A DNA stretch of 64,000 bases. It comes from Chlorokybus atmophyticus. Taxonomy: Eukaryota; Plantae; Mesostigma and Chlorokybus algae. The DNA is taken from the NCBI GenBank assembly GCA_009103225.1, contig RHPI01000638.1, positions 372,001 through 436,000 on the forward strand. Reading direction: 5' to 3'. Made by a program: the position numbers and the translations under genes. The notes under the pieces are model-generated. The model was not told the DNA's origin. It did no database searches and saw only the letters and a program-made list of their open reading frames with translations. Numbering within the stretch: position 1 is the stretch's first letter; every line of letters starts with the position of its first letter. This document shows positions 1 to 61,000 of this stretch, piece after piece.

Positions 1-123
1 TTTAAATGGTTGGTGGAAAACGTCATCAAGGTAGCTCTGGTTGGCCTTGCGTGTCTTCTGTTCCTGTGGCTGTTTCCTGGACGTCGGCGATTTGTCAGAT
101 TCATCATGAAGTGGCTCCGTTGA
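1..123 (+). CDS. 3' end of a paralog (copy E) of the unknown membrane-anchored family; gene starts before the window
   Basis: Frame 1 reads FKWLVENVIKVALVGLACLLFLWLFPGRRRFVRFIMKWLR-stop. It aligns with copy B (FKWLMEGIVKASLVGILCVLWLFPG). DNA 60-280 matches the reverse complement of ~15130-15400. Confidence 0.65.
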   Translation, partial: FKWLVENVIKVALVGLACLLFLWLFPGRRRFVRFIMKWLR

Positions 124-778
124 AGCAGCGCAGTGGTCTAGCCAAAGGGCTTTCTTGTTTCGGACTTGCGTGTAAGCAGAGAGGTACGCTTGTTTGAACT
201 GGAACCCATGTAGCAGCTTGTGATGAGCTGTAAGGTGGACCATGGACGTCATGTATGTGAGCGTGGTGTTTTTGTAGCTAGAACAGCCTGCTACCGGTAG
301 TGATTCCTCGCGCGCGCCCGCACACATACACCTCACGGCTGTCAGAAGGTCCTGAATGCGACCAGAATAATGTCATGGCTCTTGCTACTGGGCAATAACC
401 GAGTCTTGCCTGCGTACATGACAAGCTTTGATGGGCAATAGAACGATTGTAGTCACTGCTGACGCGGTGTTGCAAATCGTGCGCGCGAGTAGCCAGGTGA
501 TGCAATAGTGCAAATTGGGATGAGTGTGCGTATTGGCCCATATGCATGTACAATGTGTTTCAACCATCTTACATGTGTTCACCAGCATTTCAACCTTTTC
601 TATACAGCTCAGCACACGCAGCAACATGCAGCATGCATCCGGTACAGTATTTGCAAGCCTCTGAGAGGTATCAGCATCACAACGTGTGACAATGAGAAGC
701 CTTCACTACAAACGGTGGGTATATGTGTTTATGTCTTACACAATCCCTGCATCCTATGTTATACAAGTGGCAACCCGT

Positions 779-781
<3 letters not shown>

Positions 782-830
<49 letters not shown>
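782..830. repeat. (GA)n microsatellite running into an assembly gap
   Basis: Perfect GA dinucleotide run, followed by N at 831-1436. Confidence 0.95.
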
Positions 831-1436
831 NNNNNNNNNNNNNNNNNNNNNNNNNNNNNNNNNNNNNNNNNNNNNNNNNNNNNNNNNNNNNNNNNNNNNN
901 NNNNNNNNNNNNNNNNNNNNNNNNNNNNNNNNNNNNNNNNNNNNNNNNNNNNNNNNNNNNNNNNNNNNNNNNNNNNNNNNNNNNNNNNNNNNNNNNNNNN
1001 NNNNNNNNNNNNNNNNNNNNNNNNNNNNNNNNNNNNNNNNNNNNNNNNNNNNNNNNNNNNNNNNNNNNNNNNNNNNNNNNNNNNNNNNNNNNNNNNNNNN
1101 NNNNNNNNNNNNNNNNNNNNNNNNNNNNNNNNNNNNNNNNNNNNNNNNNNNNNNNNNNNNNNNNNNNNNNNNNNNNNNNNNNNNNNNNNNNNNNNNNNNN
1201 NNNNNNNNNNNNNNNNNNNNNNNNNNNNNNNNNNNNNNNNNNNNNNNNNNNNNNNNNNNNNNNNNNNNNNNNNNNNNNNNNNNNNNNNNNNNNNNNNNNN
1301 NNNNNNNNNNNNNNNNNNNNNNNNNNNNNNNNNNNNNNNNNNNNNNNNNNNNNNNNNNNNNNNNNNNNNNNNNNNNNNNNNNNNNNNNNNNNNNNNNNNN
1401 NNNNNNNNNNNNNNNNNNNNNNNNNNNNNNNNNNNN
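831..1436. other. Assembly gap (N run); further gaps at 17136-17308 and 58573-58676
   Basis: N characters; each gap is bordered by a microsatellite or a G/C homopolymer. Confidence 0.99.
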
Positions 1437-1444
1437 GGGGGGGG

Positions 1445-2400
1445 CTGCAGTTGCATCGCATGTGCGCGCATACATGCACATGCACACACATGCGCACGTG
1501 TGCTTCCCTGCCTTACCTTAGATGTCACGTTCACTGAGCGTCCGCATGCCATATAATATCATCTGAACTGAAAAACTCTCACTGCGTTCACAGTCAAGAT
1601 CTGCAAGTATTCCGCACCGCGTACGCTGGTTGTTTGTGCTCACTCGTCACAGTGTTCTTGTTGTGCAGACATGATGGTGCTACCGAGTGGCGTTGACGTG
1701 CATGCACACAAGCCACCAATTAGTTGAGTAAGGTCACATGTTGCAAGGGATGCCTCAGTCTGTTGCCTGGTCCAGTGAGTGTTCAGCGCAATGCTCATGG
1801 CGGGGAACATGAACTCACGCTGTGTTAGGCAAGCATCTTTACGCCGGCACACTAGATGCCAGCCTGCTGAGCAGGCTGACACCGTCTGTTCATTATGCAC
1901 GCTGCCATGTCAGCTTGCAGCAACACACCTCCTTTTTAACTTGAACGAGTTGACTGTTCACAATGAGCGGCAGCCATGGCATGGTAAGTGCTTAAGCTTG
2001 CGTGCAAAGGCAGTCCGTTTTTTTATGCGGGTCAGCTGGTCAGCAAGGAAAGCGGAGACTTGACTACTACCACTGGCTTCCAAATGCCTAGAATACGAAA
2101 ACCATATTGAAAATCAACAAGCACAGACAACGTTGAATTGGCTCATCAGGCAATCACAGAAGCACATGGTGTCGCACTTGATCAAGCCAGCTGCAGCCAC
2201 AGTCTTAGCCACCACCAGTTGGTTGGTTGCAACCAATCGGCGAGCTTGCAGCGGAGCGGAGGCGCCTTAGGCAGGGGCGGGGGGCCACTGCTAGGTACAT
2301 CGCTAGGCTCACCCCTCACACACACAAAGCTGAGCTCACACTCGCTGTCCCTCCGTGCCGCCTCCTCCTCTCTTCCCCCACGTCGCGTAACGCGCAAGTG
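1445..2400 (-). pseudogene. 5' fragment (A') of a C-type paralog, divergent from copy A, ending at the gap
   Basis: Reverse complement aligns with 13600-14560 and, more loosely, 18880-19640. It includes the segments ...VNSQLVQVKKE|gt and gtgcggaatacttgcag, matching copy C exons. Confidence 0.45.
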
Positions 2401-3624
2401 CACCAGCCCAGCACGGCCCGCGCTGCACGGGGCTGCCGGGTCCCTGCGAACCGTTGGGCGCGTCAACGAGTGTGGTGCGCATCCACAGTCCCTAACCACT
2501 AGGTACCCTAACCCCTGCTGTAGGGTACACGCTGGGGCATGATGTAGTACACCACCACCCAGGCTAGTGGCAGACGTCAATTTAACGGCGGTCAGACACC
2601 CCACCCCGCGCAGCTGAGCTCGCTGCCGGCTGCCGTGAGGTGGCGGTGGCGCTGCTGTTGTTGGTGGCGGTGGTGCCTACGGCCAAGCTCGGCGTAGGGA
2701 AGGGGAGGTGCGGAGGCTGCTGCGGCTGGAGGGGCGTGTGGACCCCTACTCTGGGCTTCGGGGCCCGCTAGCAGGTGTGATATGCATGCTACGCTACCTG
2801 CAGCGGACATGCTGTGGTGAATGTGCTTGGGTTGCTTATGCCAAGCCCACGTTGGCGACGACGTCAGTGCAATGTTACACAAAGAACACATTATTATTGG
2901 CATGCCAAGCACATTGGCTGGCCCACCTAGCCGCAAGCTCACCCAGTGGGAACTTGATAGCTGAAGCGCGGCTGGTAGCTGAAGCTAGCGTGCGCTTGCT
3001 GGTCATTTGCTGGTCGCGAGCAACTGATAGTATGCACGGGAAAAGCTTGACGCATGCCAGTGTTTAGAGTTGCAGCATGTGCCTAACCAGCCCTGCCGCT
3101 GTTCTCGTGGCCGGGGATGAACATGCACACAGTGACAGTTGCCTTGACTTTTTCCCTGCTCGCAAATATGTCTGCGTATACATCTTTTGGTGACGACGGC
3201 TGAGTGAGTGGGTGCAGAGAACGTGACGTAATCGCTACCCCTGAATTGGTTTTGTCTTTCAGATCATAAACACCAATTCAATGCACACACTCAGGTTCGA
3301 CATATTAACACAAGCGGACAACAGGTCCAGCTTGCGTGTGCAGTGTGGAACCGATGCACAGGCAATTCTTAGCATCTCAAATAACCACTCCAACCGCATG
3401 GTGACAATGGTTGACTGTTAACAACAGCAATTGCTGACGCTGCGCATGCCGCTTCCATGAATAGCTATAGCTTTTTGATGACATGCTGCTAGACGTCTCC
3501 ACGTGCAGTCTAATGCGTTCATGTGGACATGTGCGCAGGTCATATTGCCTCCGTCGATCGTGACAGCAACGATTGCTGTTGGACTGCAACTACTGAAGGC
3601 TAACGCTCAGTAGCTAACATGGCG

Positions 3625-5488
3625 ATGGCTGTGTCTGCGACACTGCTAGTACACAGTGAGTGCCAGTATGCAGGCTTCTGTGTGCATGTGCGAGCTCAAT
3701 GCAGGCGCTTTTGGTATCCGTGCATGCGTGCATCGGTCCGCGTGTGTGTACAGCCGCATGCGTGCTAGTGTTGAACTGCATTATGGGCAGGAGCTCACTT
3801 GCCAGCCTGCACTACCCATTTACCTTTCAGAGAGTCCAGGCGGTCTGTACCCATCAAGACCGGTACGTGCTTCCTCATGTCAGTGTTTGCTTCTTGTTAG
3901 CATTGTTCTTCAGGGCTGCCTGTTGGACTGTACGCTTACACAGTCTGCTCACACCTACACGCAAAAACAAGCCTCTGCAATGCAGGCTACATGCGGAAGT
4001 TTGCACCAGGAGTTGTACGAACAACCCGCTTGCAAACAAACTGCCAACAAGAGCGGGCGCGGCTACCACTTAGTACAAGCCCAGAAGGTATGCAGTCGCT
4101 GCAGTGGCTTTGTTGCTCGGTTTCAAAGACAACGCTCTTGTACAACTTGCTTTCATAGCAGGCGCTTTCCCTGACAGCTCCGCAAGTTCCAATGACTCTG
4201 CACTCGAGCAGCTCCCAGACGAACAACAGGCAAGTGAGCAATGATGCTTGATTCATAGTTGTGTGATTATGATGGGGTATTTGGAAACCAACACATGCGC
4301 ACTCATATTGTAACTGAATCATGTAGTTAAATCACACAGGTGAGCGAGCACTTCTGGCTCTTACCGGGAGGTGTATGCACAGCAATGCTGGTTCCATGCA
4401 AACTCCGCCCGCCACTGTCTGTTGAGCTGATGGAGGTTATCCGCAACTGCGCACCGGAAGCAAATGACAGCAGTGCAGACAGCGTCATTGCCTACGCAAA
4501 GCGAGCGCTGGAGATGGTCGCACAGGATGAAAAGTCCAGAAGATACCAGTCCAACTTTGAAGGACGGGCCCTGTTGTTCAATTACAATGGCAGGGCGGCG
4601 GAGAGTTTCTCTTGGGAAGACTTGGCATTAGCTGCGGGGGTAGCGCAGTTGTTCAAGGTGTGCAAGCGCGATTACCAGCTGACCAACTTCGGCAATGCGA
4701 AGAGTGTTGTGTTTGTGGGAGACTCTGCACGCGCACATGCGGCCGCATACGTGTATGGTGCGATCTACATTGCAGAACAGAATGCACGGAACCAGTGGCG
4801 TCAGGTGAGCATTGACAGCAGTGCAGATAAACATGAATGCATAGTATAACCAGAAGACAGGGGTGGCCGTTGGCGTCTGATGTTGTTCAGCTGCCGTTGC
4901 TGCACAATGATAGAATCCAACACATGCGTGCGTGTCTGACTTCTCTGAATGCCTCCCTGGTACACGCCTTTGCACAAGCGCGTGCATGTAGTGATCTGAG
5001 CAAAGGCGTGTAGCAGGGAGAGGGATACCTTAATCAACCATAACTTACATTGCTTTATGTGTGTTTGGCAGCAAAGGAGCAACAGCGTGGTGGGTGTGGG
5101 TGACGTCAAGTTGTATTCGAACTTAGCTGAATGCATGAGGCACTGGACGGTCACCGTGCTGAAGGGTATCGGCGCAACCGACATGATTGACGTCCTGCGC
5201 AAAATTGACGGCACTTTTTTCGAACTCAAGTACAAGACCCTCAGCACCGTCCATGATTTGGAAGAATTGTGCGACTCTCCGCCCAGACGCCAGTGGTGTG
5301 TCGAGAAGATCCGCGACAGAGCCTTGCAAGCCGCATTGGTGGCCGCTGTATGCGTCGCGCTGTTGCTGTTGTGTCAGCTTCTGACACAGCAGCTCGGCAT
5401 ATTTGTCGTCAAAGGCGCATTCCTGGTCTTTTTGCTTTGTCTTTCCTTGTTTTTGGTTTGTGTTTTTGTTTACATAGTACTTACTTGA
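3625..5488 (+). CDS. Copy A: intact unknown protein of about 360 aa with two C-terminal hydrophobic helices
   Basis: Exons 3625-3655, 3986-4087, 4162-4229, 4340-4804 and 5072-5488 splice in phase into one ORF (MAVSATLLVHSYMRKF...VSEHFWLLPG...VVFVGDSARAHAAAYVYGAIY...VGVGDVKLY...CMRHW...TM). Each exon has homologs in copies B, C or D. The start Met is chosen because it is conserved in A, B and D while upstream sequence carries stops and indels. Confidence 0.7.
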
Positions 5489-8400
5489 TGAAATTGTCCT
5501 TGGATATATGGCTTCAATAGCTCTTTTTGTTTTACCGTTGGCCCTTGAACTGATTGCTCTATATTATTTTAGACTATTTGTTTCTGTGATTAGCTTTGCA
5601 ACTTGTGCGTCATCACTCAGCAGATGTGTACGAAAGTTGAATGTGCTACGTGTGCACATGCGTGCAGGTAACCAATTAACTGTGAGCATGCATGCATGAC
5701 TAACGGGGATGGTTAGTCGGTAGGTAGGCTATAGTTGTTAGCTAGCCCGGTGGTTGTGTATGGTGATATCATTGATGAGTGTAGACAATGTGTTGCTGTT
5801 GGGCTGGCATGTAAACATGGAATGTGTGACCTTGCATGCACGAAATCCCCATTCCACCTTTTATACATAATAAGCATACGATAAAGAGTCGTGTTGTGAG
5901 ATGGACACTGAACGCCATTCCATAAGTGATGTATTATAATCCATTTCACCCTACTTGCATGTCTTATTGTTGGCGACAATAGCAACCACTAAAATGTTAC
6001 TTACCGCCTTTCGGTTTATTATTGCGCATATGCTATATGCACAACATTGTTGATGCATGCCGCATAGAGGTGTTTAACCTGATTGAACTCCATAGCGCAG
6101 CATGTGCTCAATAAAATTAAACATGGGAACACTGTCTCCCTCCCCACAGCCTTGTGTGTATAGAAAATCGAAGATGCTATCGCATCCATGCAATAATACA
6201 TCACACTACCATACCCCTTATATACACACGTTGAACATGATGTACAATGCACGCCAATAGCAAATGTACACATACTTTCTTACTACTTCACACATGTTCA
6301 AAAACCGGGCTGCCTACCCAAGCAACTCCATGACTACGCCCAGAATGTCATTCATGCAAGCACACATGCGCAATCATTACCTACACACAGCCATGGTGTC
6401 AACACCGACTTCATACATTGTCGAGGACGACAACACGACCCCCCCGCCGCCGCTACCGAACCCTCGACCACCCGCAACCCAAATCGCTGCGGCTTCACAT
6501 GTACTACATTAAAGCTAGTAGTCGTGGTGTACTTTGGGGGGGGGTTACGGTTTGTTCAAACACAGCATGCATAGCACTCCCTCATTGTTGGCTTGTGGTG
6601 TGTGGGGGGGGCATGCCATGAGCACTCGTTGCCATGCATAATTCACACACCTGTAAGGTCCCAATGAACACACTAGTCACAAGGCCTCACACACTGCAAG
6701 GCAGGGCAGGCTATACATGGTCTTTACATCTATGTACACCTACACATAAATGGCCGCTCTGCCCCAACACCACATATATCCTGTAGATGCCTCACTTGAT
6801 GCGGGGGATCCAGATTCCAAAGTTGCAAAAACGCAGCCTGAATGCGGGGAGGCAGGCAAGCAGAGCGCGTAGGGAGCACCGCGCTCGGGGGGGGGGGGGG
6901 GTCCTTGAGCAAGTAGCACCCCTCAAGGCACCTCACATGGATGCACCATGGGTAGTAATCCTATGAGAAGGGCACCACCGGCTTCCCGCATCATCCACCT
7001 AAATCGGACGAGAACGCAGCAAGGGGCCTAGCCAATTCAGTATAATGCGCACCATAATGTTATTAACACCATGCTGCATCACACAGCACTGTGTTCTACA
7101 CATACCTGCCCTGTTGACCATCATGATATAGCAAAACGGGGCGACCACCTTTGCGGTTGAGACACCACCACTCGCGTACGCACCGTGGGCGCCCTCCCTC
7201 CCGCACAAGAAGATGTTCCGTCCAAGGTTTGGTGACCTTGGTGATAAGGTCCACGCCAACAGATACATTAGCTGCATGTGCTACCGTGATGCGAAGAGTC
7301 TATCTGCGCCACACTGGGAACGAGACCCGCACTCACGATGCCAGCATCCGCTTTGTTGGGCCATGTGTAGCATTTCGGCATCACTAATGGGTTGGCCTTG
7401 CCCGCCGCCTCAATCAACAAAACCGTGTGTGCAATTAAGGCAACATTTCCTTCAGACTGCCACCTCAGCCATACAGAAGCAGCACTTAAACCGGATCAAC
7501 ACCAAGGTCAATTTTGGTCATCATCGATGAGTGAAGAGCTTCCCGCACGAATCAATGGACCGGATGTAAGAACACGAACGGTTACGGCAATTACAGGCGA
7601 TGTAATTGATACAATGGTAGGAGTACCAATGAGCATTCTCAACTATGCAGCTGGTAATGCAAGTCCCCATTGTTAGCTTTTCTGAGTGCATGCTTCTTGC
7701 TTGAACCTTTACAATAAGCATTTGGTTCTTGTTTCTTCTTTTTTGAGTGCGAGTGCTGTGAGAATGCATTGGTGTTGTGAGCATACTGCATGCCGTCCGA
7801 GAGTGCATATATAGCAATAATATTCTCGTCAACCTGCAACGGACCCAGTGCGACCATACCAAAAGCTGACCATATCCTCTCTACACCAGTAACATGTACG
7901 GTACTTTGCATTGCATGCTTACATCATCAATAATTATTAACTGCATACAGCGAGCATTGAGAGCGACTTAACACCAACTCCAAGTGAACTATTCTGTATT
8001 CATATACGAGATCACCATATTGTGAGTGCATGCATATGCATTAGTGTTTTCATATCTCGAGTCTTGACACCTACCAATAGGACAACCATTGACAGTTACA
8101 TTTTTATACATCATGATAATCTCACATCTCCTTAATGCATGGGCTCATAGGAAAGCTCGCTGTTCTAGCGTCAACATTCATTTTCAAACTTCGGGCACGT
8201 TGAGGTCCAGAACACACAGTGAGTGACATCGCCAATGCAAAGGGAGCACAAGTTCTTCATATGCATATTGTACAGTTACACACAACCCAGAAGCCTATGC
8301 GAGCCGTACACATATGTACAAAAGCTATACAGCTATACACTTGTATACAATGCAGAGTCTCTACTTTGACCAGCGCCAATCCACGACACTCTTGTGCTTT

Positions 8401-9249
8401 TAGAGCGGGTTGGTCTGCCAATGCATGTTGCTGCATCCGTGCTCGTGGCATGAGCGACCCCATACATGGCGTGCGTTCTTTTCCTAGCCTCACTGCGCTC
8501 GAGGAGGCCTCTTGCGCACAGGGCACCATCGCTGTACGGCGCCGCCCACCCAAAGCATAAGGTTATAAGCTCCCAGATGGGGCCCACTTTGTCACAACCA
8601 TCTCGGCCATGGTAGCAAAAGTCGCTGCCATGAGAGGAGGCATAGCGATTTTATGAATCATCATGAAGCACGGCGTTACACACCGAGTCCCCAGGTTCAT
8701 CTTTATGGTACGGGTGCAGCACCTGGCGGCCATGGTGACGGAAGGGGGTTAAAAACGTAGAGGGGAAGGGGACATTGTTATCATTGTAGTCCTCCTCCTA
8801 CGGCGGCGGCCAGCCCATAGGGATGTCGTAGCACAAGGGGTTTGCCTCCGCTGCACTGACAATAAGCCCACGCTCACGGCACTAGGTCTGCCGCCGCCGC
8901 CATCGTGGACAGGCCAACTCACATGCACAGGATCAAGCGCGTACAGCCTAAGGCATTGTTTCGTTGCCGTCATCTGAATTCCCGAGAGGCAACACTTGGA
9001 ACTCATCATAGAGTAGGTTATCGAGTACTAGCCTACACGACAGCTATCTGCACGACAAGGGGGACAATGCCACTGACTCATACAATGTTTCAAATGTGGT
9101 TGAAGATTCAACCTTCACATCATATGGTATGATGTAGCGGAGAGCACTAAAGCATAAAATGGTAGTAAGTGCCTGCACGATACTAGCCGCACTAGTCTCT
9201 TGTGCAAGAGGGATCGGATCTCTTTAGTCCACCACTATTCCGCTTCTCG

Positions 9250-9750
9250 TCAATGATGCCCACAAAGGATTGGTTTGAGTTGTTGGCATGTGCAGTAATT
9301 TGGAGGGATGCGGTTCAACCAAGTTGATGTGCTTGACAATAAGGTGTGGACAGGCACAGGACACAAGGGAAGGGTTGTTGCCGCAGGAGGCAATTTGATT
9401 TCATTGCAGTGCTGTGTAAAAAAGATATATATGCCACATTTACTGTGAGGCTCTGCATGATGTGCAGCTTGAAGCCGCCTACTGCATGGCATGTGCCGTG
9501 CTACCAAATTTCTCATGATAATCAGTGGTCAAGTTGTATGATAATTATTTGATAATTAGTTTTTAAGGGTACCACTAGTAGCTGTATGTTGATACATAAT
9601 GTATTGACATAATGTATGTGCACGTGTGCGTGTTTATATGTGCACGTGTACTCTTGCGCGTGTGCGCATATAATATGCGAGGTACTTTTTTGCGCGCGCA
9701 TGCCTCTGTGCGAGCAACAATGACTCGCAAACCACTCACTTCCAGTGCAT
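9250..9750 (+). repeat. Decayed dispersed repeat, copy 1
   Basis: ggaagggttgttgccgcaggaggc...tgtgtaaa...gcagcttgaagccgcct...gtgccgtgct recurs inverted at ~11000-11700 and direct at ~26340-26760. Confidence 0.65.
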
Positions 9751-10999
9751 TCATGATTGTGCAATTATACTGGTTGAAGCCATCGGGCTCAAGCTGCTCT
9801 ACAATGAGTATACTTTTATAGCAAGATGATCCACTCACTTCACTACTGTTAGAGTAAGTGGATCATTTACTACTATTAATACCAGCCTATTGCTACATAT
9901 ACTGGCTTCTCTTATAGGACATGCATGCATATTATGGAGTCTTGACTCAATGGGCTACCCGCACTCCTGTGGCATATGAGCATGAGCACTAGTGCATTGC
10001 GCCTGTTGCGCAGGTAATGAAGTCACTACTAAGTAGTATTGTGGTAACTTAGTTACCTCGTGACCATTGTGCCATTGGAGACTTAGTTGTGATCAGTGAT
10101 CATCACTTGCAAGTTACGAGTGACTAACGATCTCCGATAGCACAATGATAGTGACTTGAAGCACCCAAACATCAAACGTGAATTGCACGCGCTCCAAGAG
10201 TCTCCCCCTCCCCCTCTCTCCTTCCCGCCCTCCCTCTCTCCCTCTCTCGTGTGTGTCCTCCCTCCTCTCGTGTTTGTCTCAGGCGAACGATGTGCTTGTT
10301 CTGCAGTGCAAGTCTCAGCCCGATTGCCAACCGTAGGCGGCCTAGGGTCGGCAATGTCCTTCACATACTATTGTCACTGAGTTCAGCTTTGGCGTCCTTG
10401 GGCTGGGTGGCTTGGTTCAGCAACAATAGCAGGTGATGAGGTGCACCCCATGTGGGGTCACCGCACCACTGTACCGGTAGCTTGTGTAGCGAAGCTGCGC
10501 CGCACCTGCGCTGGTGTGACAGTCACACGAGCACACTGCAGCAGGTGTTGCGGCAGCACCAAGCAACATCATCATGAGTGCTCCCCGTGCCATCTTCGCC
10601 TGCTCGCGAGCAGCATTGGGTGTGTGAAGATGTAGTTTGAATCGCGCAACATGCACTATGTGCCGAGTGAGTGTTGTCAGCTTGCCCTTCAGGAGATGGC
10701 AATCGGCTTGCATCGCCAGCAGCAACTACTTCATTACATAAGTATGGGCGCAATCAGTACATGCATATGAAGCGTGTGTACTCCACCACGCTGAATTTGA
10801 TATTATAAGGCCCTCAAATGCGCCACGTGCCGCACCTGGGGGGGTCAACCTCGCGGAGAGCCTCTCCACGACTGAGTGGGCATCCTCGCAAGCATGCCCG
10901 CTCTCCGCGAGGTTGAACCCAGGAGAACCGTACCGTACCATGGTAATGTTTGAGCCAAAAGTATAATGTTGAGGTTTAAGTTGCAGGTTCAAGTTGTGT

Positions 11000-11700
11000 G
11001 CAGCCTGCTTGTCTCGTAAGACATTCGCGCATTGTGCCAACAATGGTAGATATACACCTACCATTGTTGGCACAATGCGCCAACAGTGTGCTCCACGACA
11101 TTGACGATTTTTTTGGACATTGCAGCGCTTGTTGAACCACCATACCTCGATCTTTATGCCAGTGGAGCAGGTTTGCATATGAGAGACACTCTCATTGTGA
11201 CGCGTATACCCGGGTGCTGGAGACTTCTCTTTAGCACACGCACACATGCTGACACACTTACATGTACAAACACACAATCAAGTTATGCCTTTGAATGCCT
11301 TGAAAAACAGTTTATACAACTTGAACTTCAAGATATTAGTACGGCACCGTGCCGTGGCATGTGACATGCCACGGCACAGGCTGCTTCAAGCTGCATATAC
11401 GGCATATGCACACATATGCACCTCTCTTCACACAGAACACTAACAAGCCTCCGGCAGCAATAGCCCCTTCTCTTCTGCCCTCTGCCGTTTTGAACTTGTC
11501 ATTCAATCCAAGTTGATAGTCACGCACCATCCGCAACTGATTGCAACAATCACTCTGCACAACCACGCCAGCAACTGAACCACAACCACCAACGAGGGGA
11601 ATGACTGGCGGAATGGATGCAGTGACTGGTATTGTGCAGGTACCTACCACGCCTTGTGGCTTAATGTTGCATTGCTTCAAGCAATGCAGCAATAAAGTTG
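11000..11700 (-). repeat. Decayed dispersed repeat, copy 2 (inverted)
   Basis: Reverse complement gagggcagaagagaaggggctattgctgccggaggc...tgtgtgaagagagg...gcagcttgaagcagcctg matches 9340-9500 and 26440-26600. Confidence 0.65.
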
Positions 11701-11869
11701 CCCCCCAACTGGACCAACTTTCAAGGCTGAAGTTCAGCCACATTCAGTACATTATATGTCCCAGTGCCAATGGGCCTTCCGGGAAAAGGGGCAAAAATTT
11801 TCCCAGGTGTACTGTAACTGAGCACATGTTGCAAACCACATTTCAAAGTCACTAAGCGCCCTACGCGGC

Positions 11870-13480
11870 ATGCAGCAACACATATGCATGGAGCAAGGTT
11901 AAGAACTCAAGGGCAAGAACTGCGCGAAGTTGAAATTGCTGCTGCTATTGTCAATGATAGCAGGCTAAACTGGCTTACAAAGCATCGCTTGTGGAATGGC
12001 TTATGATGTCCACCTGACAGCTCTTCGTCACGGGGTCATTGTGCATACACGCATCAAAAAACGAAGCTAACAAGAAATAAGCACTGACATGAGAAAGCAT
12101 TGACATGAGGAAGCACGTACCGTTCTTGATGGGTGCAGACCACCTGGAGACTCTGACAGGCAAATAAGTAGTGCAGGCCGGCAGGTGAGCTCCTGGCCAT
12201 GAAGCAGTTTAACACTAGCACACACATATAATAATGTACGCATGCACGCATGCAGAGCTAGCAACAAAGCGCCTGCATTGAAGCCAGCACATGCGCAAAG
12301 GCTCTCGAGTACTGGTACTCGCTGTGTACAAGTAGTGTCGACGACACAGCCATGGCCATGTCGGCTACTGAGAGACAGCCTTTGGTAGACGCGGTCCGAC
12401 AGAAACGGTCGGCGGAGGCAACATCACCTGCTCATGCGTGCGCGAGCACGCATTGGTTAAATGCACGTGGAAGCCAGCGGCCTGTCTCTGGAAAGCTAGT
12501 TGGACGCAGCACGCGCAGCGATCAGCAATCGCTGTCACTAACAGTCAACCATTGTCACCATCCGGTCCGCAATTGGACTTAAGATGTTCAGGTTCGATTC
12601 CACAATACACACGCAAGCTGGACTTGTTATGCGATAGTATTGTTACGGTGAACCTGAATGTGTTCAACTGAATCACAAGCACACAGGTTCAACCTGTGTT
12701 TATGTGTGTTTATGATCAGAATGAAACCAAACCACACCAGGGTAGCGATGTATGTCACATACTCTCTGTACCCGACTCAAGCCGTAGTCTTTAGAAGCTG
12801 ATATACAACTCAAACACATAGGTGCGAGCAGAAAAAATTCAAAGGGACTGTCATGTCAATGTGGAAAAACCAATGGAACAACGGAACAGGGCTGGTTACG
12901 CACATGCAACTCCATACTCACAATGCGTCAAGCTTCAAGCATGCTTCCTAGAACTGTAGCTCGCAATCATACAATGGCCGGCAAGCGCACGCTAGCTTCA
13001 GCTACAGCCGATCAAGCTGCCCACCGGGAGCTTGCAGCTATGTCACAGCTATGTCAGAGTGTGGGCCAGCCCATGTGTGCTTGTCGTGCTGGTAGCGAAT
13101 GTGTGCTTTCTTCTTCAACGACACAGTGGCTTGGCAACTTGCCGCCGATGTGGGCAAGGCATGAGCACGAAATTCAAGCACATGCAGCATCCCCGCTGCA
13201 AGTAGCAGCATGCGCACCACACCTAGTGACGGGCCTCCGGGTCCAGAACCGCGGTCCGCACACCCCTCCACCTGTAGCAGCACCCCCGCTTCTTCCTTCC
13301 GCCAAGCTTGGCCGTAGGCAGCAGCAACACCGCCACCACCACCGCAGCCTGCTGCAAGCTCAGCTGCGGGGTGGGGTGTCTGACTGTCGTCGAATTGACA
13401 TCTGCCTCTCGTAGTAGACAGGGCGGGTGGTGGTGGACCACGGTGTACAGTACACCACTGGTGATGATGTAATGCATCAT
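11870..13480 (-). pseudogene. Copy D: internally deleted paralog (5' exons joined directly to the 3' flank)
   Basis: 12060-13480 is an inverted match to A 2530-3900 and includes exon 2 (MAMAVSSTLLVH). 12005-12030 matches the copy E 3' flank (225-245). 11870-11935 matches the copy B 3' flank (15066-15127). The downstream coding exons are absent. Confidence 0.6.
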
Positions 13481-13599
13481 GGCCCAGCGCGTACTCCTAG
13501 CAGGGGTTAGGGTACCTAGTGGTTAGGGACAGTTGAGGTTGTCCTCTATGCGCCACATCCGTTGACACGCCCAAAAGTTTAACTGCTAGGGACCGGCAG

Positions 13600-14560
13600 C
13601 CGCGTGCTGGGCTGGGCATACGCGAGCAGGCGGCACGGAGGGACAGCGAGTGCAGTGAGTGAGCTTTGCTTTGTGCGTGTGTGGGATGCCTTAGCGGTGG
13701 CCCGCTGCTCCTAGCGCCTCCGTTGCAAGCTCTCTGGTGTTTTGCAACCAATCAACTGGTGGTGGCTGCAGCTGGCTTGAGGGTGCGACAAAGTGTGCTT
13801 CTGCGATGCCTGCTGCCGAGCAGAACAATGTCTCTTCCAAAATCTTGTAAGTTTTACATAGTAGTTGATTCCCGTGTACTGGGCATTTGAAGCCGATGGC
13901 AGTAGTCACGTCTCCGCTTTGCTTGGCTGACCAGCTGACCCGCTGATCCGCGTAGGCAACCGCACTGTCCGTAAGCGGACAGTGCGGATACACGCAAGCA
14001 CTCACATGCCACGGCTGCCGCTCGTTGTGAAGTCAAGCGCCAACTTGTTCAAATTAACAAGGAGGTTTGTGTTGCTGCAAGCTGGCATGGCAGCGTGCAT
14101 GTTGAACAAGCGGTGTCAGCCCTGCCCAGCAGGCTGGCATCTAGTGTCGTTGTATAGACGCTTGATCAACACAATGCAAGTTGAGGTTTCAGGCCAGGTG
14201 AGCATTGCGCTGAACACTCACTGGACCCGGCAATAGACTAAGGCAAACCTTGTAACATGTAGCCTGATTAATGAAGTTGTGCCCTGTGTGCATGCACACC
14301 AATGGCACTCAGTAGCACCATAATGATGATTGCACAACAAGAACAAGGTGACAAGTGAGCACAAACAGCCAGCGTGCTTGGTGCGGAGTACTTGCAGAGG
14401 CAAATTGTCACATGTCAATGCAGTGAGGGTTTTCGATTTTGGATATTATGATATGGCATGACTGCGATATCTGAGGTGAATTTAGGAGGTGCGTGCGCGC
14501 GCGCATGTGCATGTATGTGCACACACGCGCACACATACACGTGTGCGCAGGTGCAATGCA
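13600..14560 (+). pseudogene. 5' fragment (D') of a C-type paralog, divergent from copy D
   Basis: Aligns with 18880-19640 (ADSADTRKHSHATAAA...VKRQLVQINKE|gt versus TDSAAASKLTYATAAP...HLLIELGKE) and with the reverse complement of 1445-2400. Confidence 0.5.
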
Positions 14561-15286
14561 AATGCACAATCAACTCCCGTCAACTCGTGCATGTATGCAT
14601 CGAGAATACAGCAATCGTAGATCATCTGTGACAGAGAACTTGCTCGCACATGCGCTGATGCCTATTGACCACGGGGGAGGGGGGGGGAGGTGTGCGTTAA
14701 GTATGTGCGACATGCTCAACATACTACTAACATGATGTTGAGCATGCCATGGTCATAGTGGCGCTCATGATGTGCAGCGCAGCCATATAAGCGAGTCCTG
14801 CATGCGTGCATGACAAGCATGGGTGGGCAGTAGAGTCATATCACATCATGCAACAAGTTGGAAACTTGGTTGATGTCCGACATGGCAGAGTCTATGCATG
14901 TGTGCAACAGAGTTAAACACGTCTTGCATGGCTCAGTGCTGCAATGCTTGCGTCCCCATTGGGCTGTACGATGCAATGAGAATATCATGAAAGGTCGGTG
15001 TTTCCACATGTGTTGATAAGCACACGCTTCTCATTAAACTCAACAAGAGCTTAACAAGTGAGATACGGCAGCAACGTGCAATACAGAAGGTCAATGAGAG
15101 ACTCAGGGGCAACAACCGCGCGAAGTTTCCACTGCCTACTAAAACATCACGCTTACCTTTATACGTCCATGGTTTACCTCAAATCTCTTCACCATAGGGT
15201 GCTATTGTGCATGCGTACCTCTTCTCCGCTAACAGGCAAGTTCAAGACAAGAAAGCCCCTTAGCTAGACCACTGCGCTAATGCGAT

Positions 15287-17544
15287 TCAGCGGAGCCACT
15301 TCATGGTAAGTTTCATAAATGGTTCACGCCTGGAAACAGCCACAGTACACACAAAATACCAACCAAAGACGCCTTGACGATCCCTTCCATCAACCACTTG
15401 AATCTGGGTGGATTGTTGCAAACGGCTTCCAAGTCATGGTACGTTCTAAGGATGTTGAACGGCGTCCGCCAGAAGTTGCGAGTGCCCTTCCCGTCAGTGT
15501 TACGCAGGAGGATGTGCCGAAACCCTTCAGCACGGTTATCGCCCAGTGCCTCATGCATGTGTCTGAGTCTGAGTGCATCTTGACGTCACCCACACCCACA
15601 CGCTTCGGCTCTATTTCTGTACACACACAGCAGCACACACACGACCAAAGTGATGACTGTCCATGGAACACATGCATTTTGCACAGGTTGATGAACGCAC
15701 GCACATGCATGTGCACAGATGAACAGGCATGCGTCGGTATCTCCGGATCAAGGTGCAAAATGCATCAAACGACATTGGAATATTAGGCATGGGCAAAATT
15801 GTCTTAGTAAACATAACATGCAGCCTTTATGCTTCAAGTGTGTACAATGCTTGTGTTGCCCACCTCATTGTGCCACTTGTTCCATGCGTTGTACTGTGCA
15901 ACGTAGATCGCACCAAGTACGTATGCGGCCGCATGCGCGCGCGCAGAGTCTCCCGCAAACACAACACTCTTTGCAGTGCTAAACTTGGTCAGCTGATGGT
16001 CAGCTGATACACGCGCACGTGTGCACGTGAACAGCCGCGCTACCCCCGCCGCTACGGCAACGTCTTCATTTGACAAATACTTTGCCGCCTCGCCTGTGTC
16101 ATTCCGCCGCAAAAGCAGTAGCCGAGCACCATGCTTGGACCAGTATTCTCTGAAGTTGTCTTCCTGTTTGACCATCTCTAATGCTTGCTTTGCGAAGTCA
16201 ATAGCGCTGGCTGCACTGCTGTCGTTTGCCTCTGGTGTGCAGTTGCGGATGAACGGACATTGGTGGGCCAAGTTTGCAACCGACCAGCATTGCCGTGCAT
16301 GTGACTCCCGGTAGCAGCCAGAAGTGCTCGCTCACCTGTGTGTGTAGGCAGAGAATGTGTATGTGTGTGCGCGCGCGTGCGCGTGCGCGTCTGTGTGTGC
16401 GTGTGTGTGCTCACGTGCGTGCGTGTGCAGAAGGCTAAACGGGCCTTGAGCTCATGCGAGCTGCAGGAATACTTGGATCGCATGCACGTGCCTGTGCGTT
16501 TCTTTCTAATAAAGACATTAGCATACACGTAAGTACCAAATCTACACAACAAAAAACATTTGCCTGCTCTTCGTGTGCAGGCTGCTCAAGTGCAACGCCG
16601 TTGGAAGCTGCAGAGCTGTTTAGGAAAGCGCCTATTATGGTAGGGTAGCAATTGCTGAACGATAGCGCATTGATTAAACCAAGCAAAATGCATTTGTTGC
16701 ATGCCTTTTGCGCTTTTGCAAAGCGGTTGCAGCGCCCCTTTTTGGTTACTGTTTGTGTGCAAGCAGCTCACTCGCAAAGCCCTCCGTGCGGATTTCTGCA
16801 CGATGCTTGCACCACAGAGTTTGGGTGTGGGCGTGCTTGTCTGTCATAGTAGCTGCGTGCGTGTCCGTGTGTGCTTGTAGTACAGCATTCAGCAACTTTG
16901 AAGATGCTTGCAACAAACAAGCGCTAGCATGAGGAAGCACGTACCGGCGGTTCTGATGGGCGCAGACCACCGTGACTCTCTAACAAACAGACTGGCAGTG
17001 CACGCTGGCAGATGAGCTCCTGCCCATAACAGTTCAACGCAAGCACGCATGCGGTTGCGTATACAGGTGTACGCTTTTGTGTGCGCTTGTGTGCACACAT
17101 ATACCGACGCGCACATGCGCATGCCCCCCCCTCCCNNNNNNNNNNNNNNNNNNNNNNNNNNNNNNNNNNNNNNNNNNNNNNNNNNNNNNNNNNNNNNNNN
17201 NNNNNNNNNNNNNNNNNNNNNNNNNNNNNNNNNNNNNNNNNNNNNNNNNNNNNNNNNNNNNNNNNNNNNNNNNNNNNNNNNNNNNNNNNNNNNNNNNNNN
17301 NNNNNNNNCAAATTGGCAACCCAATACTGACAAGCAAATCGGTAGGGCACGCCGGCAGATGCTCCTGCTCATAGACTTGAAAAACTGGCAGTTTTGTACA
17401 AGCAATTATACGGTTGCGCACACATGTGTACACAAATGTGCATGTTCGCATATCTCAACGCGCACATGCATGTGCGCCGGCGCGCACGCACAGAATGCAG
17501 CTCGGACAATGACACTCACTGCATAGGGTCGCAGGATCTGCCAT
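15287..17544 (-). pseudogene. Copy B: frameshifted paralog of copy A
   Basis: Same exon series (MADPATLC; QKSARRALRVSCLHTN; GAFLNSSAASNG; VSEHFWLLPG; VGVGDVKMH). Has a ~14-nt deletion frameshift near 16260, a frameshift near 15510 and an AG>AA change at the exon 3 acceptor. Confidence 0.7.
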
Positions 17545-19179
17545 TGTGGTGTAGGCTATTGAGTGGTCGCCTCTGGTACACGCGGTCCAAGGATTGCCAC
17601 CTGTGCACACCTGTGCCAGCAAATGCGCTGGATGAGCACATGTGGAGAACAGCAAACCGAATTCAGACCCCCCTNTCCTTACGCTGCCAGACAGAGTGCC
17701 GCTCAGCCCATCTCAAGTCTACAACCTACGTTAAGGAAAAAGCCAGCTACAAAGAGTCATGGTAGCTACCTACAAGTACTGATGGTATGAGTCATAGTCA
17801 TGCTGCGTAAAAATGTCTATGTCTATTATGCTTGTTCCAGTAAATCATACCATACACATGAAGGACACATCTGCAACGAGCAGTAGCCGTGTCATATGCG
17901 TGCGTAAATCTGACATGCAGTTGGTCAGCAAATCATGTTGCTAGCATGCAGAAGTCAGCAAAGAAATGTGCCTGATCACCCCCAACCAGCAAAAACAGCG
18001 GCGCTGTCACATGCGTTTTCAGATAACTGCATGTGTGCGACCTGCTTCAAGAGTGTTTCATGAACGTCTAGACCGCTGCTCGCAGCAAGCCAATGGCCAG
18101 CGAACGCAGGCTAGCTTTGGCTACAGCCGCCCACCTGGTGAGCTTGCAGCTATGTGGGCCAGCCGACGTGCTTGTCGTGCAGGTGCCACCTGTGCTGCTC
18201 ATGCTTACCAAACAATGCGTTTTGTTTTTGAACAAACCAGAGGCTAAACAAGAGCAATGCAAGGCAAGCACAGAAGCACGCAACTCAAGCACATTGAGCA
18301 CAGCATAATTGCTAAAAGCAGCAGAAATGCCCATCACACCTGGTAACGGTCCCCGGCGCCCAGCGAAGGGGTCCACACCAGGCCACCGGCAGCAGCTCCG
18401 CCTCCCTCCGCCAGCCCTTAGGCCCACCACAGCAACACCAACGTGAACACCGACAATGACACCACCAACGCCAACGCCACCAACGCCGACACGTCCCAGC
18501 AGCAGCAGCAGCCCTCTAAATCAGCTCTGCTCAGCTCATCTCATGAGAGCCCTTTGAGCTGAGCCAATCAGCTGTGATCAGGCCCTTTGAGCTGATCAAG
18601 TCTTATGTCTCTGACATAAGCTCAAAGGGCCTGTCAGAGAGATGCTATGAGGGATAAGCACAATGGCGGGAAATGCACTGGCGTGAATGTCGGTGCCAGA
18701 GGTCGGATAGAAGGGCGCAAACGGGGCGCAGCGCAGTGTCTCAGCGTCGACATCATCGTAGTGACAAGATATCGACGACGGTCACCATAAAGGCGGGGCT
18801 TGGGGAGCTGCCCAGCAGTAGTCATTCATTTTGTTGTGTGTACAGTGTAGTGTGTAGTGTAGTGCTTAGGGCCGGGGCGGCGGAGGACAAAGAGGCGGTG
18901 GAGCGGCAAGGTGAAACCTGAGCTTTGTGGTGGAGCCTGGCTGACCGATGGCCCTCTTCTGCGAGGCGCCTCAGCTGCAAGCTCGCTTTGTGATCTTTGC
19001 TGATGGACTGCAACCAACCAACTGATTGCTGCTTGCGGATGCCCGGTCACTGCTGATATGGGTGGCTGAGCTAATTGGCTTTCTTGAGCGTGCGCAACGT
19101 GTGCGCTTCTATGGTGGTTGGATGTCTTCTGGTAGTTGTTTTGATTGTGTAGTACTCAGCCCTCTGTTTGCCTTTGCAG

Positions 19180-21298
19180 AACAGCGGCCAACAGACAGTG
19201 CCGCTGCATCCAAGCTCACGTACGCCACTGCTGCGCCCTCCGCTTAAACCATTTACTTATTGAGCTCGGCAAGGAGAGGTATGCTGCTACAAGTAGAAGG
19301 AGATTTGGTATGGCAGTCTGCATGTTGAGTGTTGTGCGTGTGCTTAGCCTGCTGTCAACTAGCGTGTCGTGTAAAAGGCGTTTCTTTCACACAGCACAAG
19401 GTCTCATACCATGAGCGCAGTGATCTGTTGTTATGATTGCGCCCAGCTTGAAAACGGGGTCGCACCTTCTTGCTAACACCGCATGCTTTCTTTACAATTT
19501 GCTTTAGTTTCCAGTGCTTGCGTGGCGGCCATGTGCACATGGGCGCAGACACAGACAAATGCACTCTCGCACCCACGGCTACAACTATGCACGGTGCAGG
19601 TACTGTGCGCAAGTACTTGCGGAGAGCTAAAAGTGAACATTTGGACGGACGCTACACGCTGAACTGCAGAATGATGGAGGATTCTACAGACGCGCCTGCT
19701 TTGAATGAAATGAAGCAGGCGCTGCAACTGCTCTGTGCAGGTGTGACGCCGCTGCACAATAATCTGATGAAACGCATGACTATTGGTTGAATGTGCTCCC
19801 TTCAGCAGGCGCGTCTTATCAGGATTCTGTAGCTTCGGACAACAATGCGTTCAAACAACCAGCAGCCGAACTTCAGTTGAGTGTAACACAGCAGGCAAGT
19901 GTGCATTGGTATATGTGTGAGTCAACGGCATTGACGGTTGTATTAAGAAGGATGTGCATATGCCCACGTACTTGCATCAAGCATGTACAACGCATTTTTT
20001 TCAAAACATGGTGTGCAAACGCACATAACAAGTACTCACACACAAATACACAGGTGAGCGAGCACTTTTGGCTGCTACCAGGAGTTGCATGCACTGCAAT
20101 GCTGGTGGAGTGCAAACTCGGACCATCAGTTTCCTTGCAGCTGTTGGAAGCCATCCGTAATTGTGCGCCAGTGCCAACGACATCAGCGCAGCGAGCCTCG
20201 TTGGCTACGCGAAGAGAGCTTTGGACGTGGTGAAAGATGAAGAAGGATCCAAGTACTACCAGTGCAAACATGGTGCACGCACGCTGTTGTTGAATTGGGA
20301 TGATAGAGACAGCTTGGCGGATTACCAGTCAGTTGAAGACGTTGCACTGGCTGCGGGGATAGCGCAGATGTTCCGCGTGTACACGCACGTGTACACTGTT
20401 GGCAAGCTGGCCAAATTCCGCGATGCGAAGAGTGTTGTGTATGCGGGAGACTCTGCACGCGAGCATGCGCCGGCATACGTGTACCGTGCCATCTACCTTG
20501 CAAAGTACAGTGCACAAACCTTGCAGTCCAATTGGTGCAATTCTGGTGCACAATACTACCACTTTGTTCTGGTAGCTTCCTACCACTGCTACAGAGCTTC
20601 CTCTGCTTATCGGGCTACTTTCTTTCACCTGCAGATATGCGTATCTTTGGATAGACCGCGACCCGCTTGAGTAGTTAAACCAAACATGTGAAGCACTCAG
20701 GTGAGCAACGGAAAGCAGTATACACATTTAGAGAACACATGCCACGTGTCCTGTATGGCTGATGACAAGAATGTCCATTGACTTCCTGCAATGTTCAATT
20801 ACTGCATGTTCAGGGTCACCCTGAATTCAGCAAGCTGCAAACACATGCGTGCCTATTGGACTGTACGAATGCACTTGCGAGCATCCATCAGCATGTGCAA
20901 AGATGCGTGTACCATGGAGAGAAGTAACATCTTTGTGTGTGCAGCTGCTGTGCGTTGCATAGGAGGAAGCGAGCAGAAGCTTTGTGAGTGTGGGTGGCGT
21001 CAAGTTGTACCACGACTTGGCAACATGCACCAGAAACTGAACCGTGGAAGTGCTCAAGGGCATCAGCGTATCTGACAGCCTCCTGGACATCATGCAGGGC
21101 ACCAACAACTTCATGTGGACACCGTTCAACACCTTGAACAGCCTTGACGACCTGACAACCGTTTGCAACTCCCCACCCAGACTCATGTAGTTGATGGCAA
21201 ACGTCATCGAGGCCGTCTGTGCCGTGACCGTGCTTGCCCTGGTGAGGTATCTGCTGTTGTGGTTGCTGTTTAAAGTGATCAGCCTGTGGTTCCGCTGA
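19180..21298 (+). pseudogene. Copy C: paralog with a frameshift and two premature stops, head-to-head with copy B
   Basis: VSEHFWLLPGVACTAMLVECKL... then a 1-nt deletion near 20170 into ANDISAASLVGYAKRAL...VVYAGDSAREHAPAYVYRAIY. The last exon has TGA (21038-21040) and TAG (21188-21190) at Trp positions and ends SLWFR-stop. 5' start uncertain. Confidence 0.7.

Positions 21299-58779: not shown

Positions 58780-61000
<2,221 letters not shown>

What the first reader, a model, noticed from the sequence alone, without database searches (positions are those of the whole stretch)
1..21298. Array of head-to-head paralog pairs of an unrecognised gene family, copied as a cassette at least three times
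Seen in the sequence: the sequence upstream of each B-type gene (A, D, B) is itself the 5' end of a C-type gene of the same family pointing the other way. The duplicated unit is therefore a divergent pair on one short spacer: A'<->A (1445-5488), D<->D' (11870-14560) and B<->C (15287-21298). The first cassette is inverted relative to the other two, and a further copy (E) ends at 123. Only A is demonstrably intact; the others are frameshifted, deleted or truncated. Inference: fast birth-and-death of a co-regulated pair is typical of conflict or recognition loci (self/non-self, toxin-antidote, immunity). I recognise no described family for this protein.
Basis: partly seen in the sequence, partly recalled or inferred. 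Interest (0 to 1): 0.8.

Follow-up and report, generated by a model that had tools for sequence, protein, structure and literature searches.

The report
Decaying algal DUF7168 gene cluster
This is an ordinary, locally duplicated and mostly decayed cluster of a gene family found only in the alga Chlorokybus, with one working, expressed gene for a membrane-anchored protein built on a bacterial or phage-type domain of unknown function (DUF7168); it is not a repeated cassette of head-to-head gene pairs.

Summary
The paralog cluster is real. Window 1-21298 holds one intact gene (A), the 3' end of a second (E), and four broken pieces (D, B, B', C).

Spliced RNA contigs give A seven exons on the + strand. 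The 386-aa product is identical to JGI model Chrsp175S00138 of Chlorokybus atmophyticus.

The shared upstream sequence (A 1460-2774, D 14532-13223, B' about 19564-18340) always has the same orientation as the gene it precedes. It is each copy's own upstream region plus 5'UTR exon. It carries no family coding sequence or conserved ORF on the other strand.

The only real head-to-head junction is B'/C. It joins a 5' fragment (exons 1-3) to a 3' fragment (exons 4-7), which fits an inversion breaking a gene in intron 3.

The flanks of gap 2 overlap homologously at 64% identity, so B' and B are different copies.

The family is not unrecognised. Its core matches Pfam DUF7168 above threshold and resembles bacterial DUF7168 models in shape. 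Only five proteins exist in the databases, all from Chlorokybus. The scan found the sister cluster earlier on another scaffold (s1-079098).

Birth-and-death evolution is confirmed. A conflict role is untested.

The parts
1..277 (+). Copy E: end of the last exon (open frame 1-120, stop 121-123, one TM-like segment) plus about 150 nt of 3' flank. The rest of E lies before the window. E is probably JGI model Chrsp175S00139 (P0002).
   Evidence: 1-277 matches B 15402-15136 at 70.5%; stop position; hydropathy. P0002 sits next to A on the scaffold and matches no window copy exactly.
831..1436 (.). Assembly gap 1, in intergenic DNA between E's 3' flank and A's upstream module. It is flanked by a (GA)n run on one side and a G/CA-rich run on the other.
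1460..2643 (+). Upstream module of A (promoter region). It is homologous to D 14532-13339 and, more weakly, to B' about 19564-18492. It contains a separately assembled RNA contig at 2058-2447 whose strand is unknown.
   Evidence: homology; contig, depth 73.
2644..2774 (+). A exon 1, a non-coding 5'UTR exon. It is spliced to exon 2 across a 764-nt GT..AG intron.
3539..3655 (+). A exon 2. The ATG is at 3619.
3791..3862 (+). A exon 3.
3986..4087 (+). A exon 4.
4162..4229 (+). A exon 5. The following intron is GC..AG.
4340..4804 (+). A exon 6, the conserved core with the DUF7168-like region (protein residues 94-248).
   Evidence: Pfam 27-29 bits against a cutoff of 25.5.
5072..5550 (+). A exon 7. 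It carries a second conserved block and two C-terminal TM-like segments. The stop ends at 5488 and the transcript is seen to about 5550.
12057..13338 (-). Copy D, a 5' fragment only: exon 1 at about 13338-13223, exon 2 with its ATG at 12359, exon 3 at 12190-12119, and about 48 nt of intron 3, after which homology ends.
13339..14540 (-). Upstream module of D. A low-depth RNA-run contig matches 13469-13560.
15136..17127 (-). Copy B, a pseudogene running from intron 2/exon 3 to exon 7 (stop at 15287-15289). It has a 14-nt deletion in exon 6 and frameshifts in exon 7. Its 5' part, if any, lies in gap 2.
17136..17308 (.). Assembly gap 2. Its flanks overlap in homology at 63.6% identity, so it separates two different copies.
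17327..18491 (-). Copy B', the most diverged 5' fragment: exon 1 at about 18491-18340, an intron 1 of about 750 nt, exon 2 at about 17590-17480, and the start of exon 3, followed by the gap.
18492..19564 (-). Upstream module of B'. It is colinear with D_up in patches of 59-72% identity.
19650..21298 (+). Copy C, a 3' fragment and pseudogene covering exons 4-7. The exon 4 acceptor is lost, exon 6 has a 1-nt deletion, and exon 7 has two in-frame stops. It stands head-to-head with B'.

Best explanation
Window 1-21298 is a local birth-and-death cluster of a Chlorokybus-only, intron-bearing gene family. The unit that was copied is a whole gene with its own upstream region: a module of about 1.1-1.2 kb, a 5'UTR exon, six coding exons and about 150 nt of 3' flank. 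It is not a divergent gene pair.

Shown:
- Gene A is intact, spliced and expressed.
- A encodes a 386-aa protein made of a low-complexity N-terminus, a DUF7168-like alpha/beta core, a second family-specific block and two C-terminal hydrophobic segments.
- D and B' are 5' fragments (upstream module plus exons 1-3).
- B is a frameshifted copy from exon 3 to exon 7.
- C is a 3' fragment (exons 4-7) with a frameshift and stop codons.
- B' and B are different copies separated by an assembly gap.

Inferred:
- The array arose by tandem duplication followed by rearrangement.
- The single head-to-head junction (B'/C) arose when an inversion with one breakpoint in intron 3 split a + strand gene. Its 5' half is either B' (adjacent, and equally diverged) or D (truncated cleanly in intron 3).
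- The protein is a tail-anchored membrane protein that exposes a domain inherited from a bacterial or phage DUF7168 gene. Its biochemical role is unknown.
For: Gene model
- Contigs from three runs in two studies give the joints 2774|3539, 3655|3791, 3862|3986, 4087|4162, 4229|4340 and 4804|5072. All are GT..AG or GC..AG on the + strand.
- The joined frame gives 386 aa.
- That protein is 100% identical to P0001, Chrsp175S00138.

Duplicated unit
- A_up, D_up and B'_up align in the same orientation as their genes, and the exon 1 donor CAG|GTGTG is conserved.
- There are no family exons or conserved ORFs on the antisense strand.

Fragments and lesions.

Complementary fragments
- D ends about 48 nt into intron 3.
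- C's exon 4 starts about 85 nt after the distal end of B'_up.
- A's intron 3 is 123 nt.

Past selection: codon-position differences are 3rd > 1st/2nd (0.32 against 0.22/0.19 for A-B), which suggests past purifying selection.

Family
- phmmer against 1.84 billion representatives gives 5 hits, all C. atmophyticus.
- Pfam DUF7168 scores 28.9 bits against a cutoff of 25.5 and is hit by 4 of 5 members.
- The Atlas shape search ranks bacterial DUF2786/DUF7168 clusters first: TM 0.50/0.59 over 155 residues, and 0.38/0.70 over 106 residues.

Hydrophobic tail: residues 330-386.
Against: - The strand of the RNA contig at 2058-2447 is unknown. A non-coding divergent transcript from A's promoter is not excluded.
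- The inversion is not proven. No breakpoint repeats or outgroup arrangement are available. A-C introns do not align while A-D and A-B introns do, so D+C is not clearly one gene. B' exon 3 runs into gap 2, so its true end is unseen.
- The runs are only guessed to be RNA, although spliced contigs show that cDNA is present.
- The DUF7168 match covers only profile positions 16-83 of 140.
- The AF2 model is mediocre (pLDDT 63.5, from a five-sequence alignment).
- No PDB fold match is clear.
Confidence: 0.75

Rival explanations
1. The unit is a divergent pair of family paralogs (B-type and C-type) sharing a short bidirectional spacer, copied as a cassette three times. A' and D' are the 5' ends of C-type genes.
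For: - The upstream block is homologous at A, D and B'.
- At B'/C a family 3' half does follow on the opposite strand.
- An unspliced RNA contig lies at 2058-2447 upstream of A.
Against: - 2644-2774 is spliced on the + strand as A's 5'UTR exon.
- Family coding matches are absent on the opposite strand at A_up and D_up, and beyond them at 124-830 and 14540-15136.
- Antisense ORFs are not conserved.
- C's exons 4-5 start only beyond the distal end of the module.
- The JGI protein numbers of E and A are consecutive (2504, 2505), so no gene is annotated between them (this is an inference).
Confidence: 0.07
2. There was no inversion. D, B' and C are independent partial duplications, or retro- or repair-mediated fragment insertions, that happen to end or begin near intron 3.
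For: - C is more diverged from A than D is, and A-C introns do not align.
- Similarity is mosaic: E is C-like in exon 6 but B-like at the 3' end. This shows repeated exchange, so simple histories are unsafe.
Against: - Two 5' fragments ending at exon 3 or intron 3 and one 3' fragment starting at exon 4 would be a coincidence.
- The residual intron pieces (about 48 nt plus at most about 85 nt) add up to roughly one intron 3.
- The fragments keep their introns, so they are not retrocopies.
Confidence: 0.3
3. Part of the array is an assembly artefact. Tandem copies were collapsed or mis-joined at gap 2, and perhaps at gap 1, so the number and order of copies is wrong.
For: - The flanks of gap 2 carry the same gene segment at 64% identity.
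- Gap 1 sits between simple repeats.
- Gap lengths are only estimates.
Against: - The copies differ by 20-40%, so they are true paralogs and not haplotigs or collapsed identical repeats.
- Gene A's model is independently confirmed by RNA contigs and by the JGI protein.
Confidence: 0.2
4. The unit is cargo of a transposable element.
For: - An earlier, untested note places a Plavaka-type transposon about 9.7 kb before the window.
- The copies lie in both orientations.
Against: - The units have no terminal repeats and no other repeats appear in the 64-kb self-comparison.
- Only five protein clusters exist, on two scaffolds.
- There are no transposase-like hits.
- The copies are confined to one 21-kb stretch.
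Confidence: 0.04

Closest known systems
Pfam DUF7168 (PF23771), usually paired with DUF2786 (PF10979), in bacterial, plasmid and phage proteins
   Same: - The core of the protein (residues about 178-249, including the conserved N-A-x3-F-x-G-x3-R-A-H-A-A-A stretch) matches the HMM above the gathering score.
- The predicted alpha/beta core superposes best on bacterial DUF7168 models.
   Different: - The host is eukaryotic and the gene has six introns.
- No DUF2786 part is detected.
- Only half of the profile is matched.
- It carries an extra family-specific block and, in this cluster, C-terminal membrane anchors.
- Neither side has a known function, and no papers mention DUF7168.
The Chlorokybus Chrsp171 cluster (P0003-P0005; earlier scan finding s1-079098)
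   Same: - Same family: 27-35% identity across the core, with the same invariant residues.
- Same species, also locally amplified.
   Different: - Those proteins have no C-terminal hydrophobic segments.
- They lie on another scaffold.
- This cluster is mostly pseudogenes.
Ordinary tandem or inverted gene clusters evolving by birth-and-death (for example plant NLR or receptor-kinase clusters)
   Same: - Local copies in mixed orientation.
- Truncated and frameshifted members.
- Mosaic similarity suggesting gene conversion.
- One or a few working genes.
   Different: - No recognised immune or recognition domain.
- Very small family (five annotated proteins).
- No evidence of positive selection was obtainable.

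Membership tests
Pfam DUF7168 (PF23771) | Sequence match to the family HMM at or above the gathering score (25.5 bits) | tested here: met
   - P0001 scores 28.9 bits (E 1e-6).
- Exon 6 alone scores 27.1-28.1 bits.
- 4 of 5 family members hit at E <= 0.1.
- The B pseudogene piece scores 14.8 bits.
- The match covers profile positions 16-83 of 140 only.
Pfam DUF7168 (PF23771) | Shared fold with family members | tested here: inconclusive
   - The AF2 model has pLDDT 63.5 and pTM 0.70.
- The top ESM Atlas shape hits are DUF2786/DUF7168 clusters: TM 0.50/0.59 over 155 aligned residues (rmsd 3.6) and TM 0.38/0.70 over 106 aligned residues (rmsd 2.8).
- No solved structure is available for comparison.
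DUF2786-DUF7168 two-domain architecture | An N-terminal DUF2786 domain | tested here: not met
   No PF10979 hit in any of the five proteins at E <= 0.1.
Divergent (head-to-head) gene-pair cassette | A second gene on the opposite strand starting in the shared spacer at every copy | tested here: not met
   - A's spacer holds A's own + strand 5'UTR exon.
- There are no opposite-strand family exons or conserved ORFs at A or D.
- Only B'/C is head-to-head, and both are fragments.
Tandem or segmental gene cluster with birth-and-death | Several paralogs within one locus, including pseudogenes and fragments | tested here: met
   Six copies or fragments lie within 21.3 kb. One is intact and four carry frameshifts, stops or truncations.
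Transposable element | Terminal repeats, a transposase, many dispersed copies | tested here: not met
   - The self-comparison shows no terminal repeats.
- Only five protein clusters exist, on two scaffolds.
- The whole genome DNA could not be searched.
Tail-anchored membrane protein | Hydrophobic segment(s) at the extreme C-terminus and no N-terminal signal peptide | tested here: inconclusive
   - Kyte-Doolittle maxima of 2.6-3.1 fall at residues 330-386 of A, and 2.4 in E's tail.
- No signal or transit peptide predictor was available, and topology was not tested.

The most novel reading that the evidence does not exclude
A bacterial or phage DUF7168 gene entered the Chlorokybus lineage by horizontal transfer. 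It then gained introns and, in this cluster, a membrane anchor. It now turns over rapidly in two local clusters because it acts in a conflict, for example against viruses or mobile elements, which would explain the high pseudogene load.
Probability: 0.12. Interest if true: 0.6.

Novelty: new variant of a known kind. Interest (0 to 1): 0.3.

Why it matters
The locus matters mainly as a correction. Conserved sequence upstream of paralogs was read as a divergent partner gene, but it is the genes' own promoter and spliced 5'UTR exon. The locus is therefore a common decaying gene cluster and not a new kind of paired cassette.

The modest positive result is a second, membrane-anchored and expressed branch of a Chlorokybus-only family built on DUF7168. 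That domain is otherwise bacterial or phage and has no known function. If horizontal origin were shown, the alga would offer a eukaryotic handle on an uncharacterised prokaryotic domain.

Tried and rejected
- PDB fold searches by Foldseek and VIA-align wide gave nothing clear. Best Foldseek E was 0.015 with TM 0.25. Best Z was 5.8, with weak KH-like rows below Z 5. I draw no function from them.
- PHROGs gave only phrog_421 at E 0.015. NCBIfam gave nothing.
- Word-based protein searches with P0001 and with the five-sequence profile returned only the Chlorokybus proteins.
- The look-up of encoding contigs for P0002 found no record, so E's DNA left of the window could not be read.
- Literature: no papers mention DUF7168. 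Five mention DUF2786 in passing, with nothing functional.
- I searched for a remnant of B' upstream sequence left of 12057, as some inversion models predict. Only chance-level matches appeared.
- The E-to-A and B-to-D spacers are not homologous beyond the 3' flank, so a single large inverted duplication of a two-gene block is not shown.
- ORFs in 5489-12075 and the long ORFs at 29-31 kb and 43-48 kb gave no Pfam hits.
- The joined (spliced) A protein was computed only inside local scripts, to check the frame and to map copies within the window. Database searches used exon 6 by reference, then the identical stored protein P0001.
Full report
WHAT IS THERE

The window is GC-moderate eukaryotic DNA with short introns.
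- A (+) 1460-3900 is colinear and inverted with D 14536-12084 (68% over 2648 gapped columns).
- A 3736-5297 aligns with B (-) 17072-15393 through exons and introns at 65-66%.
- A exon 6 and exon 7 align with C (+) 20044-20515 and 20949-21191.
- Window 1-277 aligns with B's 3' end, 15402-15136, at 70.5%.
- tblastn of the A protein finds no further copy between 22 and 64 kb.

GENE A FROM RNA

Four public runs of the same organism were laid on 1437-6400 as contigs. Contigs from three runs in two studies skip six stretches. After the permitted shifts these are GT..AG introns, one of them GC..AG, all on the + strand.

The exons are 2644-2774, 3539-3655, 3791-3862, 3986-4087, 4162-4229, 4340-4804 and 5072 to about 5550. 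The joined frame, computed only in a local script, opens at ATG 3619 and closes at 5488, giving 386 aa.

A phmmer search with exon 6 by reference against 1.84 billion representatives returned a 386-aa protein that is 100% identical to it. This is P0001, EukProt/JGI Chlorokybus atmophyticus Chrsp175S00138. Gene A is therefore intact, expressed and already modelled by JGI. Its first exon is a non-coding 5'UTR exon separated from exon 2 by a 764-nt intron.

WHY THE HEAD-TO-HEAD CASSETTE DOES NOT HOLD

Its counterparts in D (exon 1 about 13338-13223) and B' (about 18491-18340) have the same orientation as their genes and keep the donor CAG|GTGTG. The conserved block continues about 1.1-1.2 kb further upstream in all three: A to 1460, D to about 14540, B' to about 19564.

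Nothing of the family is encoded on its opposite strand.
- tblastn with P0001 and with the C-like neighbour P0002 finds no hit in A_up or D_up, or in the DNA beyond them at 124-830 and 14540-15136.
- Antisense open frames are not conserved between the copies.
- The A_up/D_up alignment is full of indels that are not multiples of three.

C's own recognisable exons start only after the distal end of the B' module. The exon 4 equivalent lies at about 19650-19748 and the exon 5 equivalent at about 19805-19893. JGI numbers E and A consecutively (2504, 2505), so no gene is annotated between them (this is an inference).

One observation remains open. A separate contig covers 2058-2447 at moderate depth, unspliced and of unknown strand. 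A low-depth contig from the same run matches D's upstream module at 13469-13560. This could be an upstream start, a promoter-associated RNA, or background.

THE COPIES

- D holds the upstream module, exon 1, exon 2 (ATG at 12359; 11 of its 12 encoded residues are identical to A) and exon 3 (12190-12119). It also holds about 48 nt of intron 3, after which homology stops near 12057.
- B runs from intron 2/exon 3 (17127) to its stop (15287-15289). It has a 14-nt deletion in exon 6 and frameshifting indels in exon 7.
- B' lies to the right of gap 2. It is a separate, more diverged 5' fragment, about 62% identical to A and D, holding the upstream module, exon 1, intron 1 (about 750 nt), exon 2 and the first about 45 nt of exon 3.
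- C holds exons 4-7. Its exon 4 acceptor is lost, exon 6 has a 1-nt deletion, and exon 7 has two in-frame stops.
- E is seen only as its last 41 codons and 3' flank.

Across exon 6, differences are commoner at third codon positions (0.32-0.38) than at first and second positions (0.19-0.28). This suggests the copies spent part of their history under purifying selection.

Similarity is mosaic. E is C-like in exon 6 (92% over the first 40 residues) but B-like at its 3' end. B, C and E share a short tail ending, while A has a longer one. This points to exchange between copies.

THE GAPS

Gap 1 lies between a (GA)n run and a G/CA-rich run in intergenic DNA. It affects no family exon, but it does hide whatever lies just beyond A's upstream module.

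The two flanks of gap 2 both contain the end of intron 2 and the start of exon 3, at 63.6% identity to each other. The letters on the two sides are therefore not continuous, and 'B' as one gene from 15287 to about 18490 is not supported. The gap may hide B's 5' part and B' exons 4-7, or it may mark a rearrangement.

ORIGIN OF THE ONE HEAD-TO-HEAD JUNCTION (INFERENCE)

Two 5' fragments end at exon 3 or intron 3, and the only 3' fragment starts at exon 4. D keeps about 48 nt of intron 3. At most about 85 nt separate the end of the B' module from C's exon 4. A's intron 3 is 123 nt.

An inversion with one breakpoint in intron 3 of a + strand gene would produce exactly the observed junction, with the distal end of an upstream module abutting exon 4. 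There are two candidate histories.
- The inverted piece is B' alone. B' is adjacent to C, and B' and C are the most diverged members of their respective halves.
- The inverted piece is the whole block from 12057 to about 19600. D would then be C's 5' half and the ancestral array would be all + strand.

I cannot decide between these two, nor fully exclude independent fragment duplications.

THE FAMILY

Only five protein clusters match, all from C. atmophyticus. They are P0001 (A) and P0002 (Chrsp175S00139, 63% identical, probably E) on this scaffold, and P0003-P0005 on Chrsp171 at 28-35% identity. Two word-based searches, one with a profile, added nothing.

Pfam DUF7168 is hit above its gathering score by A (28.9 against 25.5 bits) and at E <= 0.1 by four of the five proteins. 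No DUF2786 is found.

An AF2 model of the core (pLDDT 63.5, pTM 0.70, five-sequence alignment) is alpha/beta. Its best shape matches among ESM Atlas clusters are bacterial DUF2786/DUF7168 proteins: TM 0.50/0.59 over 155 residues and 0.38/0.70 over 106 residues. One such cluster also carries a SprT-like domain. PDB searches gave nothing clear.

A has two strongly hydrophobic C-terminal segments (residues 330-386) and E has one. The Chrsp171 paralogs have none.

This agrees with the earlier scan report on the Chrsp171 cluster (s1-079098). I checked the same claim independently on this cluster.

FUNCTION

My best guess is a tail-anchored membrane protein that displays a DUF7168-type domain. The domain's role is unknown in any organism, and no papers mention it.

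VERDICT

This is a real but ordinary birth-and-death cluster. The paired-cassette reading is not supported. The family is a eukaryotic, intron-bearing, membrane-anchored variant of DUF7168, restricted to Chlorokybus.

Noticed in passing
window 60599-60886 (next to the single N at 60887): A perfect 6-nt-period tandem array of about 290 nt, seen as a ladder of 100% self-matches. It lies in a region of strongly negative GC skew (-0.28).
   Followed up: no
window 38000-48300, + strand: A long stretch with sustained positive GC skew holding several 260-340-aa open frames (43027-43935, 44453-45238, 45208-46194, 47243-48265). It contains weak internal protein-level repeats, for example 45718-46116 against 46460-46858. 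None of the frames has a Pfam hit. It may be a large repetitive gene.
   Followed up: partly
window 2058-2447 and 13469-13560: RNA-run contigs cover the conserved upstream modules of A (depth 73) and D (low depth). They include motifs invariant in all three modules, for example CAGTTGGTTGGTTGCA at about 2218. Their strand and meaning are unknown.
   Followed up: partly
window 20690-20733 (C intron 6): This stretch encodes a peptide close to the C-terminal 14 residues of the JGI model P0002 (E). That model therefore ends in an intron-6-derived alternative exon and lacks the exon 7 whose end is visible at window 1-123. The JGI model of E may be incomplete.
   Followed up: partly
window 5546-12056: A 6.5-kb spacer between A and D with no family homology, no ORF over 183 aa and no Pfam-recognisable content. 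Its nature was not determined.
   Followed up: partly
window 3822 and 5298: There are two single-base differences between the assembly and the RNA contigs of two runs: A>G at 3822 in exon 3 and G>T at 5298 in exon 7. They may be strain differences or assembly errors.
   Followed up: no
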